This document shows, in pieces, positions 49,761 through 61,773 of a stretch of 64,000 bases of DNA. This DNA comes from Fonticula alba ATCC 38817. Its lineage: Eukaryota > Protista > Nucleariida. Under the pieces are notes generated by a model that was not told where the DNA came from, made no database searches, and was given only the letters and a program-made list of their open reading frames with translations. Both the position numbers and the translations under genes were made by a program. How positions within the stretch are numbered: the stretch's first letter is position 1; each line of letters starts with the position of its first letter. The stretch is taken from the NCBI GenBank assembly GCA_000388065.2, contig KB932207.1; one strand, written 5' to 3'.

Positions 49761-52700
49761 GCTCTCTGCATGGACCACTCCTCACTCTTCCCCTGTTATC
49801 GACCTCCATGCGATGGACAACAGTGCATCTCCCTCCTGGTCGTTCCATTCAAGATCGGCTTTGCCTGTATCTTCTTCTACGCCATGGCCAGTTCCTCCAC
49901 CTCCGAGGATGGCGTGATGACGGCTGTTACGGTGATCCTCTTTTTCTTTGTAGTCGGCATCATCAACTCCGAAAATGATCGTCTCATCCGGTATGTTGTG
50001 CCTTCCTCATCGCTCTCTCTCTCTCTCTCTCTCGCACGCTCGCTCGCTGTCTCCTCACCACCCCTGCATCCCATCCCCGCGCTCCATGGCTGACTACTTT
50101 CCCTCTCCCTTGCACCGGGCCACCGCAACCCCCCTCACAGGAAGCAGTGGTGGATCAGCCTGACCGTGCGCACCCGGACCGAGCAGCTGCAACGCGTGCG
50201 CGACCGGTCCGAGGCCCTGCTGTACTATCTCCTGCCGGGATTCGTCATCAACCGGTACGTTGACTGCCCACATGGCACCGGGCTAGGGTGGCTGCTGCTT
50301 CGCCATTGCTCGGGGGTCTACGAACACAGCCCCCCCCCCCCCTGCTAACCCCCTTCCCAACGGCCCGGCCGCTAGCCTGATGAAAACCCCGGATTTCCGC
50401 AGCCTCGCCGAGTCCTTCGACAATGTGGCCATCGTCTTTTTCAGCCTCCCCAGCCGTACGTTCAGTCGTTGCAGCGGTGCCCGCTCGCTCGACTCCCGCG
50501 ACGCCCCTTACACTGGCAGCCGATATCCGGACCCCGGCACACTGACACACCATGACCAGGGCTGATGGGGGACGAGCTGTCCGACGAGGACTCCTTGGAG
50601 ATTCTCATCCGGCTGTCGCGCTGCTTCGACCAGCTGGTGCACTATTATGGCGTGCTGAAGATCAAGGCCGGCGGGGAGAGCTTCCTGGCGATTGCCGGCG
50701 GGCCGGCCGTGTACACCTGCAATCGGCCCTTCCCGCCGCTGCCACTGAGCCTCTACGCCAGTGGCGTCCATGGGAGCTGGACCTCCCTGAAGACCATGCG
50801 TCACATTGCCCGGGTGTTGGTCCTGGCCCAGCAGCGGTACATCGAAACCGAGGATCCGGCTCAGGCCAACTGCTGGGACTCGCCTGGCCGTCCGGCGCCA
50901 TACCGACGCCTGACGAGACATTCCTTGGTCCCGGCGGGCCAAGATGGCGAGTTCCCCGGCCCCATGCTGGGCCGAGATGTGCCCCCGGCCAGGCCGGTGG
51001 CCGGAGCCGGCCCCGCCATGGATCCTGCCGGTGCTGCGAGCGGGGTCCTGCCCTCGGCCATCTGCCCGAATGGCTGGGACCCGGTGCTGTCGCCGCCGCC
51101 GCCGCCGACGTCCACCTTCCTCCACCGGGTCCCGGGGGCTGGGATGCCGGTGGCGGGCGACACCGTGCACGCCCCCCAGCCAGGCCCGGCAGGGCCTGGC
51201 AGCAGCACGCCCAGGGATGATGCCATCAATATGGTAAATACGTCGCACTTTTCCGGGCAACTTGGAGCCAAGAGCCCCCCGCGGGGGACGATAGGCATTG
51301 ATGATGCCGCCAGCTCCCTCTTGCTGCGATCCATGGCCGGGGATGTGAAGGTCCCGCGGCATGCCTGGCTACGCCAGGCCAGGCAGGCCGGCTGCGACCG
51401 GTCTAACAAGCTGGCCGGCAGTCCGGCCGGCGGATCGACCCCCCGGGCAGGCCGGCTGGCGGAGTCGCGGCCCGGCAGCGCTTCGGCCACGCGGCCCCCG
51501 CGAGATGTGGCCTCCGAGGACTTCAACCGCGCGCACATCGTGCTCCCGGAGAGGGTGGTCGCCGGCGAGCCGGCCGGCGAAAGCCTCGTCGACAGCCTGC
51601 TGTATGAGACCCTGGACCGGGACAAGAGCCAGAACTTCCGGGTCTGGCGCAACATCCGCCACTCGATCAAGCGCATGTCGCCGCAAATCGAATATCATCA
51701 ACGCCAGCCGGTGCCGCGACCATCGTTGGCCACCGTGTCGCCGCGCATGGCCAACTTGCGCGACGCCCGCATGCGCTCCCTCGGCAAGGGCGGCCGGCAG
51801 CGGGGCAAGGCCCCGGGCGGCAGGGAGCCCGGCCAGCCGGCCGGCCAAAGGCCCCAGCCGGTGGCCGATGGCCTGGACATCGGGGCCGCCATCGAGTACC
51901 AGTGCCCGGCTCTTCTGCCGGCCGACCAGCGGCTGGCCCTTTCGCCCGCCATCAACCAGGGGGGCCTGGCGTGGGACGACGATGGGATCGACCTTGCCCC
52001 GAAGGGCCCGAGGCTGGGCAGCGTGGATTGGCGCCTGTTACAGCCGTCCCGGTCGGACGGCGGCGGCCATGCAGCCCGGCGGGACTTGCGGGCGACGGGC
52101 CACGAGAGTGGGTCGCTCGCAGGGCCGGGGGGCTTCCGGTCGCCGCGAAGCGCCGACATCGAGGCCCTCGTGGAGGCCGACAGCCCGGACCTCGAGCGGG
52201 CCTTCGAGCTGGACGCCGGCGAGGACGACCTCGAGGACTTGGACATGGAGGACGGGTCCTTCCTGGTTGAGGAGTGGGAGGAGCTGGCCCGGTTGAATGA
52301 CGGCCTGACGACCCAGGCCCCGAGCCAGCGCCGGCCCATGCACATAGACTTCATGGGCTTGGACCTGTCGCGAGCCGCGCAAATCGGCGACAATCTCAAT
52401 GCCCTGTCCTCGAATGAGCACCTTTTCGATGCGGACGGCAACTTCCACCTCTGCCTGCCGACCGTGCACGAGCCCGGCACCGGCAAGTCCGAGGCGTGGA
52501 ATCACCACTGGGACCGTGAGGCCGAGGAGCTGATGCACCACGGCGCCCGCTACTGGCCGACCCACGGGGCCCAGGCGGCCGGCGGCCCGGGGGCAGGCGA
52601 GCCCGGGCGCTTCCTGGCCGAGCCGACCATGGAGTCCCCCTTCGCCGGGTCGATGCTGAGCGACCCGCTGTCGCGCTTGCTACTCCTGTCGATCCACGTG

Positions 52701-54874: not shown

Positions 54875-55780
54875 GGCCGGGCGAAGGGCCGCCGGGCCGG
54901 GATCCCCCTCCCCCCCCGGCCGCCGGTGGGTGAATGTGCATCGGTGTGCATGGCCGATCGCAGGCCCCCATCCGTGGAGTTTGGCCCGGGCCGGGATCCC
55001 CCCAAGCGGCCGGCCTCATGGCCATCCGGCCCGCCTGGCCGGCGTGCGCTGCCACCTGCGCGAGGGTGGACCATGACCCCCATCCCCCCTGGGCAGGCTC
55101 TGTGAGCGCGCTTCAAACTCGGGTGTATTCTTGCACAGGATGAGGAAAATAGACAGGGGACATGTTGGTCGAGAGATGGGCTGTCCACAGGGCGGGGGGA
55201 GGGGGGAGGAGGAGCGAGGACGCGGGGAAAGACGCGGCCGAGGGGAGGTGAGCGCATGGCGCCGCGCACCGAAAGTGGCACATGCCAAGGGGGATGGAGG
55301 GGGGGGGGGAAGGGCGGGGGCCCAACGCGTGGTCTCGAGAACTGCAAGGCACGCGAGCCATCCCTGGCCCCGAGTCAGAGCGCGTAGGGGACGGCGCTGT
55401 GCCCAGCAAGACGAGCGGGCGGGGGATGGAGGCCAGGACAGAGACGGCACCCGGCGCCTCCCCTGCGCGACGGGATGCCGTTGTTTCTTGGCGCGAGTGT
55501 GTTTGCTTGTTTGCTCTCTTTTTTTTTAGATGGGGGGCGCGAATGTGCCCCGGCATCGGCATGGCTGCCTCGCCGGGTCTCGGGAGCCGGGATGCTTCAC
55601 GGTGCCTGGCCCGGGGCGCTTCGATGGAGGGGCGAGGGTGTATATGTATAAATCAATAAGGTGCCCTGCTGTGCATATGGGGAGGGGGGTGGGGGGCGCG
55701 TTGCGGCCACACATCAGGGCATCGAGTCTGTCCCAGAGGGGGTTCAGGTGCGCGCGCGCGCGCGAGCACGCCTCTCGGCC

Positions 55781-58520
55781 TCAGGTGGCGGCCATGGCGG
55801 TGCCCCGGCGGGAGGGGGCTTGCGCCGGGGCCCCGGGCATGGGCCCGCCCTTGCCGGGCTGCTGGTGGAGTTGCTGCTGCTGCTGCTGCTCGCGGCGAGT
55901 CGCGCGCACGCACAGCCCGGCCCACTGGTTGGCCGCCACGGCGGCCGTCCACTGGCCCACCATCCAGGGCACGAAGAAGTGCATGGCCACCGGGAGGGTG
56001 AAATACCGGGCCGAGCGGATGACAATGGCCAGGAAGGTGGCCATCTCCGGCGACAGGGCGGCCATGGCCTCGGCCAGCAGCAGCGACGCCGGGGACAGGG
56101 ACCCGCCCGCCTCCAGGGTCAGGGCCGCGGCCACATACCCCTCGAGGCCGTGCATCAGGAGTTCCTGGACCCAGGCAATGGTGGCCACCCCGGCCGCCAC
56201 CAGCAGGCCGATGACCGCGCGCCGCCAGAGATCGATGCCGCGCATGCGGCGCAGGTCGCCGAGGCGGGGGGTCGGCCCGGCGGGCCCGGCGGCCGCCGTG
56301 GCCGCGGCATTGCGCCGGCGGAGCTGCTCCACGCCCCAGAGGATTTGCCCGCGGCTGCGGACCGCATGCTCGGTCGGCGGCATGGCCAGCTCGCCGTCCG
56401 GCACGTCGGCCTGCTCGAAGGAATTGTCGCTGTCCTTCAGCATGTAGTGCGGCCGGAAGGGGATCTTCCGGAGGTGCAGCTGGGCCAGGTGCCGGAAGAG
56501 GAAGGCCGCCGCCAGGCCCAGCAGCTGCAGGGTCACCATGAAGGTGGAAATGCGCGTGGCCACGCCGGGGGCCAGGACATACTCGGCCGGGCGGACGCGC
56601 TCCAGCACGCCCACCGCCACGGCCAGCACGAAGACCACCTGCGCGCGGAAGGCATTCGGCCGCTGGCGCAGGAGGCTCGGCTCCGGCAGCAGGCGCCGGT
56701 CCACCGGGATGGTCCGGTCAAAGAGGGCCGCCTGGGCCGACACCTCCTGGTCATGGTCGTCCGCGTGGTCGGGGCGCGGGTCGTCGGCCGGGCCGGCCAT
56801 GGGGTCGGCGCGGGCCGTCGCCGGCGCGGCCGCCTCCCCGAGCGTGGCCCCGGCGGTGGTGGGCTTGCCGGCCGGGGTGGCGGCATCGGGGCCGGGCGCC
56901 GCGGCCCCGCGAGACCGGATCTTGCGCAAGTCCTCCAGCGCCAGGGCCGCGCGCTGGCGCATCCGCTCGTCGGCGGTCGAGGTGAGCTCCGCGGTGGCCG
57001 GCGCCTCGGAGGAGGCCTCCTGCCGGGGGCCGGGGCCGCCGTCCTCGGCCAGGCCGGGCCCCGGGCTGGGGGCGGACGGCGGACGCGACGCCCCGGCCAG
57101 GGGGGCCAGGTCGCCGCTGGCCACCTTGGCCAGGCGCTTGTCAATGACCAGGTCCCCGGCCGAGGCCGAGTCCAGGATCGGCGCCAGGGTCATGGTGGCG
57201 GCGGCCAGGTCGGCCAGGGCGGCCGGGCGCTCGCTGGCCGGCAGGTCGGCCGGCGTGACGCCGAGGCTGCTCCGCCGGGGGGGCACCGGCATGGCCGCCA
57301 GACCGGCCACCCCGGAGGCCGAGCCCCGGCGGCTGCTGGGGTCGGTGTCGGCGAAGGAGGACCGCCGGCTGGGGGGCTTCAGCTCGACGGTCTTCACCTC
57401 GGCGCCGGCGGCGGTGGCCGACCCGCCGAGCGGCCAGCGGGGCCCGCCGGCCGGGGCCGCGATCACGGTCACCGTGCTCCGGCCGCCCGGGGCCAGGAAG
57501 TATCCCGACTGGCCGGGGCCGCCGCCGGCGGCCGCGGAGTCGGCCGCCTGCGGGCCCGGCTCCGCACTGGCCGACGCCCGACGCGAGGAAGGCCGACTGG
57601 GGATGGAGAAGGTGGCCTGCTTTTCGCCGATCTCCGGGAGGATGTCCTTGCGCTCCTCCTCGTCGACATCGTCCTCCTCCTCCTCCTCCTCCTCCTCCTC
57701 CTCCTTCGGCGAGGCGGGGGCCGCCATGCTGGCCGCGGTGGGCGCGGCGGCCAGGGCCGTGGCGGCACTCGCGACGGCCGACGCCCCGCCGGGCGGCTGC
57801 TTGGCCGGCTGGATGAATGCCTCGAAGGGGGACAGCTGGCCGGTTTCGGCGGACAGAATCTGCGACCGCGGCCGGAAGCGCAATACCGGCGGGGTGAGCT
57901 GCTCATGGCCGAGGGCCCAGCCGACGCCCGGGCCGGGGCCGCCCGGCGACGCGGCCACCTCCGCGCCCAAGGGCTCCTTGTCCTCGGAGCCGGAGTCCGG
58001 GGCAGGCATGGGGGCGCCGCGGGCCGGGCCGGCCGCCAGCCCGGCCGCCGGGACCGGGGCCGACATGCTGCCGCCGGTGGCACTCACGCCGCTGCTGGCC
58101 GGGCCCGGGCCCGGGCCCGAGCCCGAGCCCGAGCTCGAGCCCGAGCCGGCCGCCTGGGCCATGGCAGCGCCCTCATCACCGCCCGCAGTCAGCATGAGAG
58201 ACTCCAGCTCCAGGGGATCCTTCTCGGTTTCCATGATGTACCGGAAGAAGTGATCATCCAGCAGCTTGTACAGCCGGACCCCGACCAGGGTGGTGAGGTA
58301 TGTGCAGAAGTAGGAAGCCCCGTAGGCCACCGCGGCGAAGGCCATGGTCACCGATTGCGAGCCGATCAGCACCGACACGGTGGCCGCCGCGCCGATGTAC
58401 CCCACGGTGGCCAGGCTGGCCAGGACGACAAACTGCTTGCGCACATGCAGCGCCATGAAGAGCAGCATGCCGGTGGCAACCATCAGATGGGCCGACGGCA
58501 GGCCCGAGGATTCTGTGCAT

Positions 58521-58566
<46 letters not shown>

Positions 58567-60724
58567 CGGCCCCCGGCGAGCGATGGAGACCGGAGGAGGG
58601 GACGGCGAAGCCGGCCGGCCGCAGGGGAGAGGGGCCGCGCACAGGAGCAGGCGTAGGCGGTCAGCACACGAAACAGCCCTCGACGGGGTCAGCGAAAAAA
58701 GGGTGGCACCAGGCAGGCAGACCCCCNNNNNNNNNNNNNNNNNNNNNNNNNNNNNNNNNNNNNNNNNNNNNNNNNNNNNNNNNNNNNNNNNNNNNNNNNN
58801 NNNNNNNNNNNNNNNNNNNNNNNNNNNNNNNNNNNNNNNNNNNNNNNNNNNNNNNNNNNNNNNNNNNNNNNNNNNNNNNNNNNNNNNNNNNNNNNNNNNN
58901 NNNNNNNNNNNNNNNNNNNNNNNNNNNNNNNNNNNNNNNNNNNNNNNNNNNNNNNNNNNNNNNNNNNNNNNNNNNNNNNNNNNNNNNNNNNNNNNNNNNN
59001 CCCCCCCCCACCACCACCACCACCACCACCCGCGGACACATCAGCCAGGGGCAAACGCACCAGGACCACAGGCAGCCAGGGGAAGCTGCTCCAGCAGGGC
59101 GACGCGGCTCTCGAACGGCGCCACCAGGGCCGCGCGGCAGTCCTCCTCAAAGAGCCCGGCGCCGCCGATCATGGACCCCAGCAGCTGGCGCGTCATGCGC
59201 AGGAAGGTCAGGTAGATGTACACACGCGAGGGGAGGGCAATGTCCCAGGTGAACATGAGCACGGCCAGCAGGGCCTCGAGGCCGGCCGACACGGGGATCA
59301 CCGCGTCCGGCAGCCACCCGCCGGACAGCTGGGCCAGCGACAGCCCCGGGCCCGGGGTGCCGAACAGGTTGACACCGCCCACCGGCCCGGCCAGGATGGC
59401 GTCCAGCCACTGGTAGGCCGTGCGCAGGCGATCCAGCCCATGGGACCAGGGGGCATCCGACCGCTGCAGGGCCACGGCCAGCTGGCGGATGGCCGGCCGC
59501 TCGGCCGCCTGGAGCTGCCGGCCAAAGCGCCCCTGGGCCAGGACCGCCACGAACCAGGCCAGGAACACCCCGAACACCAGCCACGGGGCGAACACCCGGT
59601 AGAAGCTCCGCCACCGGGCTCGCGGGGACTGGGCCTCGCGGCTGTCAAACCACCGCCCATACTGGTCGAAGAGGGTGGGCCCGGACCGGACGACGGCCGG
59701 GGCCGCCGGGGTGGCCGCCTCGCCGGCCGCCGCCGCCGTGGCCGTCAGACTCGGCGGCGGCGGCACGCTCCCCGGCCGGGAGTACCCCCCGCCGGCAAGG
59801 TGCCCGAGTGACGGCGACTCCGTGGCCAGCAGCATGGTCGGGCTGTCGGTGGCCAGAAGGGCGTCGGGGCCCGGGTGGGCGGCGGCGGCGGCGGCCGCGG
59901 CGCCGGCCCGCCGGCGGAGCCCCGCGTGCTGGCCGGCCAGATCCGCGGCCGAAGTGGACCCCCCGGCGGCCGCCGGCGTGCCAGCCCGGGCGGCGTTGGA
60001 GCGCGATTCCACCGGCGGCGGCCCGCGAGCGGATTTGGTCGACAGCAGGGCCGTCAGAAAGACCTCCTGGCTGTTGAGCACGGCGCCCGGAGGCAGCAGC
60101 CCCGCGCCGTCGGCCAGCGGCTCCGGGCGGTGCTCCGCCGGGGGGGCATCATTCGCCAGGCCCGATGGCTTGGCAGGCTCCTCGGCAGGGGGGCCATGCA
60201 CCGGGTCCGCGGGCCGGCCGCCGGGCGGGCCTGCCATGACAGTGGCCGCGTGCGCCGGCGGCGCCATGCCATCGGTGCGGGGCCGGGCCGTGCCGACGCT
60301 CCAGGCCCCGCCCGGGCCCGGATCCGGCCGCGCCGCCTGCCGGCTGGCCTGCGACGCTTGAAAGGCCTGGACCAGACGGTCGGCCTCCTCGATGTCCATC
60401 GTGCGGAAGGGCGTGCCGGGGGAGTGGTCGCCGAAGCCGCGCCCATCGTCGGCCCGGGGGTCGCCCGCATCCAGGCCATCGAGCCCCGGCAGGTGCTGGG
60501 ACGCCGGCGGCGCGGCCCAGATGTACCGCGGCACCGGGGATGCCCCCCCGACGGTCGGGTCCTCCAGCGGGAAGGCCAGCAGCGGATCCGCCGGCAGCCC
60601 GGCCGCCAGATCAGCCCGATAGCCGGCCGCGGCGGCCGCCTCCAGCGCCGCACTGATGATGCGCTGGGCGGCCTGGCGGCCGGCCAGCTCGGCATCCGCG
60701 CCGCGCTGCGACTCTTGCCGGTCG

Positions 60725-60757
<33 letters not shown>

Positions 60758-61773
60758 GTCAGACGCATGTGGATGAGCTGGCGATTGAGGGCATCGCCGC
60801 CCATGAGCGCCGGCAGCCCGGGGCTCGGGCTGGCTCCGGACCGCGCGGCGCCCTGGCCGGCGGAGTAGTCCTGAAGGCGAACCATGGCCATGGCCGGGAT
60901 GCCGGTCGGGTGACGCCCAGCCGGGCCGGATGCCGGGTGCGCCGCAGCCGGGACCACGGCCTCGGCCTCGGCAGTGGCGGTGTGCTGTGCGATGGACACG
61001 GCCAGGAAGCGGTCGGTCATGGGGGGCCCGCCGGCCAGCCCGGCCACCGCCATCGGCGACACGGGCCGCACCGGGTCCTCGGCCAGATGGCCCGGGCCCG
61101 GGTGCCAGGACGCCCCGGCCGTGGGGGGCAGCTGCGGCGTCAGCTCCTCGCGGCCCTGGGTGTCGGTCAGGGAGGGGCTCAGCAGCATGCCGAACATGCT
61201 GAAGGCCGGGGTGGCCGGGGTGGCACACCCGCTGGACATGTCCCCACTGCCCGGGCCCGGCGGGGCGTAGGCGGCAGCAGTGGCCGATGTCGAGCCCCAG
61301 GCGGGCTCGGCCGAGGTGGGCGTCGGGGCCGTGGCCATCAGCAGCCCGGAGGAAGACCCGCCCGAGGACCGCATGGTGCTCAGGGCCCGGAGGAAGGGCG
61401 TGGCCGGGGTCGGGGCCGCCGAGCAGGTGGCCAGGGGGGTGCTCGGGCCGCTGAGAGGCCCGATGCCCGGCGTGCCACTGGCCGGGCCGCGGCCCAGCAT
61501 GTATGGCGACCAGTAGGGGTTGACGGCCGGCGTGGCGCCGGCCCCGGCCGCCAATGACGGGGTCGGGTGTGGGGCCACCAGCCCCGGCGACGCCGACGCT
61601 TGGTACTTGGACGTGTCCCAGGAGGGGGTGCCCAGGCCGACGCCGCCGGGGGGAGCCTTGCCGGTGGCGGATCCGGCCGGGTCATTGGCGGCCGGCTCGG
61701 CGGCCGGTGGTGGCGGCGATGCCGCGAACAGCGCGAGCTCAGCGGTGTTCATCTTCAGACCCGGGCCCGCCAT
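55781..61773 (-). CDS. Sphingosine-1-phosphate phosphatase (SGPP/Lcb3, PAP2 superfamily)-like multipass membrane protein, ~1800 aa, apparently catalytically degenerate; 2 visible exons
   Basis: Exons 61773-59061 and 58512-55781 join in frame (GP E SSGLPSAH). Segments collinear with recalled SGPP1: GLEALLAVLMFTWD, SRVYIYL..RQLL, VALLE, ESSGLPSAHLM, LIGSQS, LLDDHF, STFMVTLQLLG, RRAVIGLL and RYFTL...FFVPW. Confidence 0.62.

What the first reader, a model, noticed from the sequence alone, without database searches (positions are those of the whole stretch)
55781..61773. Giant S1P-phosphatase-like protein with destroyed catalytic motifs: a candidate sphingolipid pseudophosphatase
Seen in sequence: the two exons splice in frame and give ...GPESSGLPSAHLM... 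(PSAH at 58487-58498), which is the PAP2 C2 motif (PSGH/PSTH). The flanking TM blocks run in the same order as SGPP1/Lcb3, through to the C-terminal RY.......FFVP motif. Established knowledge: PAP2/SGPP enzymes need C1 (KxxxxxxRP) and C3 (SRxxxxxHxxxD, containing the nucleophilic His). At the C1 position this protein has RQLLGSMIGGAGL (59167-59191; no Lys, no RP). At the C3 position it has TVSVLIGSQSVTM (58341-58380; R, H and D replaced, H->Q, D->M). The protein is about four times the size of SGPP1 because of long Ala/Pro/Gly/Gln/Glu-rich cytosolic regions (~700-aa N-tail, ~500-aa internal loop). Inference: a catalytically dead lipid-phosphate sensor or scaffold, analogous to the inactive PRG/LPPR offshoots of the LPP family but from the SGPP branch. 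I know of no description of such a protein.
Basis: partly seen in the sequence, partly recalled or inferred. Interest (0 to 1): 0.75.

Follow-up and report, generated by a model that had tools for sequence, protein, structure and literature searches.

The report
Giant, probably dead Lcb3/SGPP-like membrane protein
A 1814-residue membrane protein of the slime-mould-like fungal relative Fonticula alba keeps an 80-residue stretch resembling yeast sphingoid-base-phosphate phosphatases but lacks the residues such enzymes need, so it is probably a degenerate, non-catalytic offshoot with no relatives in the databases I searched.

Summary
The gene is real. Two minus-strand exons (61773-59061 and 58512-55781) have GC3 near 0.9 in the claimed frame. 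Together they give exactly the 1814-aa protein already annotated for Fonticula alba (GCA_000388065.2).

PAP2 membership fails Pfam's threshold (10.7-12.6 bits against 27.2), although PAP2 is the only family reported. I fetched true Lcb3/SGPP genes from metagenomes. Residues 847-924 (TM3, C1 loop, C2, TM4) align in register with Candida glabrata Lcb3 at 35% identity over 80 aa (pairwise E 2e-5; 0 of 800 shuffles; P about 0.003 with PSAH held fixed). Most of this signal sits around PSAH.

No register of C3 has the nucleophilic His.

The other membrane blocks, including the C-terminal "RY...FFVP" block, resemble SGPPs no more than shuffled sequence does. The C-terminal block has no relative among 1.84 billion representatives.

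The N gap was not bridged and no RNA was obtained. However, the C1-to-C2 loop is only 3 aa longer than in Lcb3, so a hidden exon is unlikely.

Verdict: probably (about 0.6) a degenerate Lcb3/SGPP-derived pseudoenzyme. The "sensor" role is speculation. Interest is moderate to low.

The parts
59061..61773 (-). Exon 1 (ATG at 61773; 904 codons plus 1 base)
   Evidence: GC3 is 0.85-0.95 in frame. The ORF appears. It is identical to P0001 residues 1-904.
58513..59060 (-). Intron (GT...AG). It contains a (GGT)n/G run at 59001-59039, the N gap at 58727-59000 and (CA)n at 58521-58574.
   Evidence: Sequence read. Contigs of four runs break at both repeats and none bridges the gap. The same gap is in the NCBI assembly.
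55781..58512 (-). Exon 2 (2 bases completing codon 905, then 909 codons, then the TGA stop at 55783-55781)
   Evidence: GC3 is 0.87-0.99 in frame. Identical to P0001 residues 906-1814.
59629..61773 (-). N-terminal low-complexity tail, aa 1-715 (Ala/Pro/Gly/Ser-rich; poly-Q at 60727-60756)
   Evidence: Composition. No Pfam family found.
59533..59595 (-). Predicted TM1 (aa 727-747)
   Evidence: Kyte-Doolittle hydropathy 2.38. Coordinates.
59236..59304 (-). Predicted TM2 (aa 824-846)
   Evidence: Hydropathy. Coordinates.
59149..59223 (-). Predicted TM3 (aa 851-875).
   Evidence: It aligns to the TM3 segment of Lcb3 that lies before KDxxCLPRP.
59116..59148 (-). C1-equivalent, EEDCRAALVAP (aa 876-886). 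The Lys position is E876, the Arg position is A885, and the final Pro is kept (P886).
   Evidence: BLASTP alignments to C. glabrata and S. cerevisiae Lcb3.
59062..59235 (-). Exon-1 part of the Lcb3/SGPP-like stretch (aa 847-904)
   Evidence: Part of the 80-aa, 35%-identity alignment. Alone it is not significant (P 0.87). As an in-register extension of the exon-2 part, P is about 0.02.
58454..58510 (-). Exon-2 part of the Lcb3/SGPP-like stretch (aa 906-924), containing C2 = PSAH (58487-58498) and the start of TM4
   Evidence: Pfam PAP2 profile positions 48-97 map to aa 906-952. hhalign to the SGPP set gave P 0.004. BLASTP.
58343..58381 (-). Best candidate for the C3 position, TVSVLIGSQSVTM (aa 949-961), at the TM5/TM6 turn. 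The Arg position is S951, the His position is Q957 and the Asp position is M961.
   Evidence: It is the top ungapped register against 24 SGPP C3 blocks, but the score is negative, so the region is not recognisably conserved. Coordinates.
56681..58255 (-). Internal low-complexity loop (aa 991-1515). It holds an E10D2 run (57668-57703) and four P-x-S-R-R-x-S motifs (57266-57583).
   Evidence: Composition and motif positions.
55916..56668 (-). C-terminal membrane block (aa 1520-1770, about 4-5 hydrophobic segments), including RYFTLPVAMHFFVP (55967-56008)
   Evidence: Hydropathy. The only match among 1.84e9 representatives is the protein itself. No similarity to the SGPP C-terminal half.

Best explanation
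The locus encodes a polytopic membrane protein of Fonticula alba with no relatives in the databases I searched. Its six-helix core is most likely a strongly degenerate descendant of the Lcb3/Ysr3/SGPP branch of the PAP2 lipid-phosphatase superfamily.

Shown:
- Both exons are coding in the claimed frame, and they join in frame to give the annotated 1814-aa protein.
- Residues 847-924 (TM3, C1 loop, C2, TM4) align colinearly and in register with authentic Lcb3 proteins.
- C2 is kept as PSAH.
- The C1 Lys and Arg are E876 and A885.
- No alignment register puts a His, Arg and Asp at C3.

Inferred:
- Topology as in Lcb3/SGPP, with both termini and the 525-aa loop in the cytosol and the vestigial motifs facing the lumen.
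- PAP2 catalysis needs the C3 His as the phosphate-accepting nucleophile and the C1 and C3 basic residues to hold the phosphate. The protein therefore cannot dephosphorylate long-chain-base phosphates by the canonical mechanism, and it probably no longer binds the phosphate head group.
- About two thirds of the protein is Ala/Pro/Gly/Ser-rich sequence that is probably disordered. It carries an acidic run and five P-x-S-R-R-x-S/T motifs, which fit the consensus of basophilic kinases.
- Any retained function is therefore most likely non-catalytic: a membrane-anchored, phosphorylation-regulated scaffold, as in the vertebrate PLPPR proteins. A lipid-phosphate enzyme or sensor is less likely.
For: - Coding frame and splice arithmetic.
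- Identity with database protein P0001 from GCA_000388065.2.
- PAP2 (PF01569) is the only Pfam family reported for the core, always with aa 906-952/959 mapped to profile positions 48-97/104. That is the register in which real Lcb3 places PSSH.
- Twenty-five SGPP/Lcb3-type ORFs were recovered from metagenomes. Two are exactly S. cerevisiae Lcb3 and N. glabratus Lcb3.
- BLASTP of P0001:815-1010 against N. glabratus Lcb3: 30.4 bits, 28/80 identities, E 2e-5.
- Shuffle tests: 0/800 block shuffles reach that score, Gumbel P 6e-4. With PSAH held fixed, 3/800, P 0.003. For aa 847-930 alone, P 2e-4.
- The SGPP set scores better than 46 other PAP2 proteins, whose best E is 0.39.
- The alignment runs across the exon junction, and the C1-to-C2 loop is only 3 aa longer than in Lcb3.
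- Low-complexity composition and RRxS/T motifs.
- All 8 strain variants lie in the low-complexity parts and 7 are non-synonymous. None lies in the membrane blocks.
Against: - Pfam's score is far below its gathering threshold (12.6 against 27.2 bits, E 0.12-0.44).
- hhalign gives only 7-8% probability against the SGPP alignment (P 0.004, 26 columns). Against a PgpB alignment it gives 0.4%.
- The exon-1 part alone is not significant (P 0.87). Its in-register contribution has P of only about 0.02.
- TM1/loop, the region after C2 and the whole C-terminal block show no similarity beyond shuffles.
- The single-sequence AlphaFold2 model was unusable (pLDDT 41.6), so the fold is untested.
- There are no orthologues to show conservation.
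- There is no RNA evidence, and the gap is unresolved.
Confidence: 0.6

Rival explanations
1. Chance resemblance. The protein is a lineage-specific polytopic membrane protein unrelated to PAP2. PSAH and its surroundings only mimic the C2 neighbourhood of Lcb3.
For: - The Pfam E-value of 0.12-0.44 is within what chance gives across 24,736 models.
- hhalign probabilities are 0.4-8%.
- Every part other than aa 847-930 is indistinguishable from shuffled sequence.
- The exon-1 part alone has P 0.87.
- No PDB match by sequence.
- The language-model search ranked a PAP2 cluster only fourth, at 0.83, which is below the usable level.
Against: - The targeted shuffle tests give P 6e-4 unconditionally and 0.003 with PSAH fixed.
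- The alignment is colinear over TM3, the C1 loop, C2 and TM4, with loop lengths like Lcb3.
- The SGPP-type set fits better than generic PAP2 proteins.
- The spacing and hydropathy after C2 fit TM4, a short basic loop, TM5, a turn and TM6.
Confidence: 0.25
2. The gene model is wrong or the gene is not functional. Possibilities are an exon hidden in the N gap, a different splice, two separate transcripts, or an unexpressed, decaying gene whose long ORFs persist only because the DNA is about 75% G+C.
For: - The gap lies inside the intron and was not bridged. No RNA run was available.
- Very long ORFs occur by chance here, for example the 1184-aa antisense ORF at 55661-59215.
- 7 of 8 strain variants are non-synonymous.
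Against: - GC3 of about 0.9 holds in a single frame across both exons.
- The only AG between the (CA)n repeat and the coding part of exon 2 is the annotated acceptor.
- Exon 1's frame stops 6 codons into the intron.
- The Lcb3 alignment crosses the junction with a loop only 3 aa longer, which leaves no room for another exon.
- The public annotation uses the same model.
- No variants fall in the membrane blocks.
Confidence: 0.1
3. It is still an active lipid phosphatase that uses non-canonical residues. For example, H913 of PSAH could work with another His or Asp such as the DDH at aa 990-992.
For: The C2 His is kept. An HMM alignment can pair VRLY (aa 983-986) with the family's GRIY.
Against: - That register needs a 26-aa hydrophobic insertion. 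This would put the motif on the opposite side of the membrane from C2.
- It still places Asp, not His, at the nucleophile position.
- The C1 Lys and Arg are absent.
Confidence: 0.04

Closest known systems
Yeast Lcb3/Ysr3 and animal SGPP1/SGPP2 (long-chain-base / sphingosine-1-phosphate phosphatases, PAP2 superfamily)
   Same: - An 80-aa colinear alignment over TM3, the C1 loop, C2 and TM4: 35% identity to N. glabratus Lcb3 and 32% over 62 aa to S. cerevisiae Lcb3.
- A PSxH motif followed by xxxATG, as in yeast PSSHTANATG.
- A C1-to-C2 loop length within 3 aa of Lcb3.
- Hydropathy consistent with a six-helix core followed by further membrane segments.
   Different: - The C1 Lys and Arg are replaced (E876, A885).
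- C3 has no Arg, His or Asp in any register.
- Pfam PAP2 scores 12.6 bits against 58-69 bits for the real enzymes.
- The protein has 1814 aa against 401-526.
- It has a 715-aa N-tail and a 525-aa loop of low-complexity sequence.
- The C-terminal membrane block is not detectably related.
PLPPR/PRG proteins (phospholipid-phosphatase-related proteins of vertebrates)
   Same: [quoted passage not shown] PLPPR3 and PLPPR4 have a long unstructured cytosolic domain of about 400 aa, and PLPPR3 has a poly-E box. The protein here likewise has lost catalytic residues, has long low-complexity cytosolic regions, and carries an E10D2 run and clustered kinase-consensus sites.
   Different: - PLPPRs derive from the LPP/PLPP branch, are vertebrate proteins of the plasma membrane, and carry their disordered part as a C-terminal tail.
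- Here the nearest branch is Lcb3/SGPP and the organism is a holomycotan amoeba.
- The disordered parts are an N-tail and an internal loop followed by a second membrane block.
- This is an analogy, not membership.
Generic bacterial PAP2 phosphatases (e.g. E. coli PgpB)
   Same: PSAH aligns with PSGH of PgpB.
   Different: The similarity is not significant (hhalign P 0.14, probability 0.4%). The best of 46 non-SGPP PAP2 proteins has E 0.39.

Membership tests
PAP2 superfamily (Pfam PF01569) | Score at or above Pfam's gathering threshold (27.2 bits) | tested here: not met
   10.7-12.6 bits, E 0.12-0.44, on several cuts of the core. Nothing on either exon alone. Real Lcb3 proteins score 58-69 bits.
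PAP2 superfamily | Motif C1, KxxxxxxRP | tested here: not met
   The aligned position reads EEDCRAALVAP. Lys is replaced by Glu, Arg by Ala, and only the last Pro is kept.
PAP2 superfamily | Motif C2, PSGH (PSTH/PSSH in SGPP/Lcb3) | tested here: met
   PSAH at aa 910-913 (58487-58498), in register with Pfam profile positions of about 52-55 and with PSSH of Lcb3.
PAP2 superfamily | Motif C3, SRxxxxxHxxxD, with the nucleophilic His | tested here: not met
   The best ungapped register gives S951, Q957 and M961 at the R, H and D positions. No register among the eight best restores all three.
PAP2 superfamily | PAP2 fold (six-helix core with the motifs on one face) | tested here: inconclusive
   Hydropathy fits six helices with a short basic TM4-TM5 loop. 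The AlphaFold2 single-sequence model had pLDDT 41.6, so no fold search was justified. No homologues exist to build an alignment.
Lcb3/Ysr3/SGPP branch | Significant sequence similarity to authenticated members | tested here: met
   Met only for aa 847-924: E 2e-5 pairwise, empirical P 6e-4, and 0.003 with PSAH fixed. The reference set was authenticated by exact identity to S. cerevisiae and N. glabratus Lcb3.
Lcb3/Ysr3/SGPP branch | Related C-terminal membrane half after C3 | tested here: not met
   P 0.65 by shuffles, hhalign P 0.41, and best BLASTP E 3.5.
Lcb3/Ysr3/SGPP branch | Long-chain-base-1-phosphate phosphatase activity | not testable with these tools
   This needs an enzyme assay or complementation of a yeast lcb3 ysr3 mutant.
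PLPPR/PRG | Descent from the LPP/PLPP branch (vertebrate family) | not tested
   No LPP or PLPPR sequences were fetched. The comparison is functional only and rests on PMC9520309.

The most novel reading that the evidence does not exclude
An independently evolved counterpart of the vertebrate PLPPR proteins in Holomycota. It would be a catalytically dead descendant of the ER sphingoid-base-phosphate phosphatase that was expanded about four-fold with disordered, kinase-regulated cytosolic regions and a new C-terminal membrane block. It would work as a membrane scaffold or regulator of sphingolipid metabolism or signalling.
Probability: 0.15. Interest if true: 0.55.

Novelty: new variant of a known kind. 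Interest (0 to 1): 0.35.

Why it matters
Catalytically dead PAP2 proteins are known from the LPP branch (PLPPRs). I found no description of one from the Lcb3/SGPP branch.

If the homology and expression hold, the gene shows that this ER enzyme can also be turned into a non-catalytic membrane protein, here in a deep-branching relative of fungi.

The weight is limited. It is one gene in one species, with no orthologues in the databases searched, no expression data and no fold confirmation. The similarity covers only about 80 residues.

Tried and rejected
- Exon-by-exon Pfam scans found nothing. NCBIfam found nothing.
- Word-index protein searches found nothing. These used the exon-2 C-terminal block (500-1590 aa candidates) and the core (177-562 aa candidates).
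- The third word search, seeded with E. coli PgpB, returned only 73-99% identical enterobacterial PgpB. The resulting narrow profile gave hhalign P 0.14. That was a poor use of a search.
- Language-model atlas: nothing for the exon-1 block. For exon-2 aa 1-130, a PAP2 cluster ranked only fourth at 0.83.
- PDB sequence searches of all blocks found nothing relevant.
- AlphaFold2 without an alignment gave pLDDT 41.6, so no fold search was run. I did not fold the core with an SGPP alignment. The model would only reflect the family rows, which makes the test circular.
- A metagenome scan for relatives of the C-terminal block found none.
- Reads: I asked for kind 'any' and got no RNA holders. DNA contigs did not bridge the gap.
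- An SGPP HMM aligned VRLY (aa 983-986) to the family's GRIY. I rejected this as C3. It needs a 26-aa hydrophobic insertion that would flip the topology, and it still lacks the His.
Full report
**What is there**

The window is 55-77% G+C eukaryotic DNA. On the minus strand, an ATG at 61773 opens a 2713-nt exon that ends at 59061 before a GTGCGT donor. After an AG at 58514-58513, a 2732-nt exon runs to a TGA at 55783-55781.

The two lengths sum to 5445 nt, which is 3 x 1815. GC at third codon positions is 0.85-0.99 in the claimed frame along both exons. Both exons are therefore coding in that frame. Long ORFs in other frames, such as the 1184-aa antisense ORF at 55661-59215, are a by-product of the base composition.

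The one large profile search, made with the exon-2 C-terminal block, returned a stored protein, P0001. It has 1814 aa and is 100% identical. It is the annotated product on scaffold KB932207.1 of GCA_000388065.2, which is Fonticula alba. All later work on the joined protein used that stored protein by reference.

**The gap**

The intron (58513-59060) holds a (GGT)n/G run, 274 N and a (CA)n repeat. I laid contigs of four DNA runs on the gene: the probable source sample, a soil metagenome, a 2025 isolate series and a sediment metagenome. All are nearly identical to the window, but they break at 58513 and 59040, and none crosses the gap. My single run search offered no RNA run.

Continuity is therefore not shown directly. 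Four things speak for the annotated splice:
- Exon 1's frame stops six codons into the intron.
- The annotated acceptor is the only AG between the repeat and the coding part of exon 2.
- The phases fit.
- The alignment to Lcb3 described below runs across the junction with a C1-to-C2 loop only 3 aa longer than in yeast. That leaves no room for another exon.

**Is it PAP2/SGPP?**

Neither exon alone hits any Pfam family. On cuts of P0001's core, PF01569 (PAP2) is the only family reported. It reaches just 10.7-12.6 bits (E 0.12-0.44) against a cut-off of 27.2. The hit always maps aa 906-952/959 to profile positions 48-97/104.

The following searches gave nothing:
- NCBIfam.
- PDB sequences.
- Two word-index searches.
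- A metagenome scan for relatives.

A single-sequence AlphaFold2 model was unusable, with pLDDT 41.6.

To test the SGPP claim properly I needed real SGPP sequences. A degenerate DNA pattern for R-I-Y-x-G-M-H-x-x-L-D, scanned over metagenome contigs, gave 109 loci. Twenty-five distinct ORFs among them carry KDxxxxPRP, PS[ST]H and the C3 motif. Two are exactly S. cerevisiae Lcb3 and Nakaseomyces glabratus Lcb3. These reference proteins score 58-69 bits on PF01569.

BLASTP of P0001:815-1010 against this set gives a best hit to N. glabratus Lcb3 of 30.4 bits: 28/80 identities, pairwise E 2e-5. The alignment is colinear from the loop before TM3 through TM3, C1 and the C1-C2 loop, and through PSSH/PSAH into TM4. 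S. cerevisiae Lcb3 gives the same register over 62 aa (E 0.025). Forty-six non-SGPP PAP2 proteins from the same scan do worse, with a best E of 0.39.

Calibration by shuffling within 10-residue blocks gave these results:
- Whole query: 0 of 800 shuffles reach 30.4 bits, Gumbel P 6e-4.
- aa 847-930 alone: P 2e-4.

There are limits to this evidence:
- An SGPP HMM scores only 6-7 bits. Its empirical P is about 1e-3.
- hhalign gives P 0.004 and a probability of 7-8% over 26 columns.
- The exon-1 part alone is not significant (P 0.87).
- The in-register contribution of the exon-1 part, with exon 2 kept intact, has P of about 0.02.
- TM1 plus its loop (P 0.28), the region after C2 (P 0.40) and the C-terminal block (P 0.65) are indistinguishable from shuffled sequence.

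I put the probability that the core descends from an Lcb3/SGPP-type protein at roughly 0.6-0.7.

**Catalytic motifs**

- C1: by the Lcb3 alignments, C1 (KDYCCLPRP) corresponds to EEDCRAALVAP (aa 876-886, 59116-59148). Lys becomes Glu, Arg becomes Ala, and the final Pro is kept.
- C2: PSAH is kept.
- C3: I slid a 34-column block of 24 SGPP sequences along aa 906-1000. Its score is negative, and no register supplies the His.
- An alternative HMM pairing of VRLY (983-986) with GRIY needs a 26-aa hydrophobic insertion. It places the motif on the wrong side of the membrane and has Asp at the His position.

C3 lies in uninterrupted exon-2 sequence. The loss of the nucleophile therefore does not depend on the gap.

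**Architecture and likely working**

Hydropathy gives six segments in aa 727-983 with a short basic TM4-TM5 loop (HVRKQ). A second block of about 4-5 segments lies at aa 1520-1770.

The N-tail (aa 1-715) and the loop (aa 991-1515) are Ala/Pro/Gly/Ser-rich. Their features include:
- A Q10 run.
- An E10D2 run.
- Four P-x-S-R-R-x-S motifs within aa 1215-1320, where about 0.3 would be expected from composition (my estimate).
- A fifth motif, RRGT, at aa 1806.

With Lcb3-like topology (inferred), these regions are cytosolic.

PAP2 chemistry needs the C3 His as the phospho-acceptor and the C1 and C3 basic residues to bind phosphate (established knowledge; see also PMC9520309). Canonical hydrolysis is therefore excluded, and phosphate binding is unlikely. 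A non-catalytic, phosphorylation-regulated membrane scaffold is the best guess. It is analogous to PLPPR3 and PLPPR4, which combine altered catalytic residues with a roughly 400-aa disordered domain and a poly-E box. That function is inference only.

**Conservation**

The C-terminal block has no relative other than the protein itself among 1.84e9 representatives.

Eight single-base differences separate the window from the environmental and isolate contigs. All lie in the low-complexity parts and seven are non-synonymous. None lies in the membrane blocks. With eight events this is only a hint (my estimate is P of about 0.07).

**Literature**

Full-text searches found nothing on this protein, nor on a dead SGPP-type protein.

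**Verdict**

The sequence observations are largely right. The SGPP/Lcb3 relationship is supported for one 80-residue stretch but fails formal membership. The loss of catalytic residues is supported, with C1 re-placed. The colinearity of the remaining blocks is not supported. Function, expression and the gap remain open. I rate it a new variant of a known kind (a PAP2 pseudoenzyme) of moderate to low interest.

Noticed in passing
window 57266-57583 and 55799-55810 (minus strand; P0001 aa 1215-1320 and 1806-1809): Five copies of a short motif, P-x-S-R-R-x-S/T: PSSRRAS, PPSRRSS, PSSRRGS, VPPRRSS and APSRRGT. Four are clustered in the internal loop. They fit the consensus of basophilic kinases (PKA/AGC/CaMK-type). 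About 0.3 copies would be expected from composition.
   Followed up: partly
window 55781-61773: Nearly identical DNA (0-3 differences per contig) is present in a soil metagenome, a sediment metagenome and a 2025 series of runs from another labelled organism. The organism or a very close strain therefore occurs in those samples.
   Followed up: partly
window 56794, 56874, 57750, 60327, 60463/60464, 61049, 61536: Eight variants separate the window from other runs. Seven are non-synonymous, all lie in low-complexity regions, and none lies in the membrane blocks.
   Followed up: yes
window 55781-55980 and 57981-58180: Summed contig depth is 30-50 times higher than elsewhere in all four runs. These are the CAG (poly-Q) repeat and the GGCTCG/GGCCCG (Gly-Ser/Gly-Pro) simple repeat, which are evidently shared by many loci and organisms.
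   Followed up: no
window 55661-59215 (+ strand): A 1184-aa antisense ORF covers exon 2 and the intron. It is an artefact of the roughly 75% G+C content, not a gene, because the GC3 signal belongs to the minus-strand frame.
   Followed up: partly
window up to about 54874 (+ strand); L002:9900-11993: The neighbouring gene is convergent, with 3' ends about 900 bp apart, and encodes a 2832-aa product. Another note of the scan places an adenylyl cyclase with a large insertion at 50700-52661.
   Followed up: no
L034, L038, L056, L060, L106 (metagenome contigs): The motif scan recovered exact S. cerevisiae LCB3 and Nakaseomyces glabratus LCB3 genes, and a Torulaspora delbrueckii PAP2-family gene, on metagenome contigs. 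Yeast genomes are therefore well represented in that collection.
   Followed up: yes
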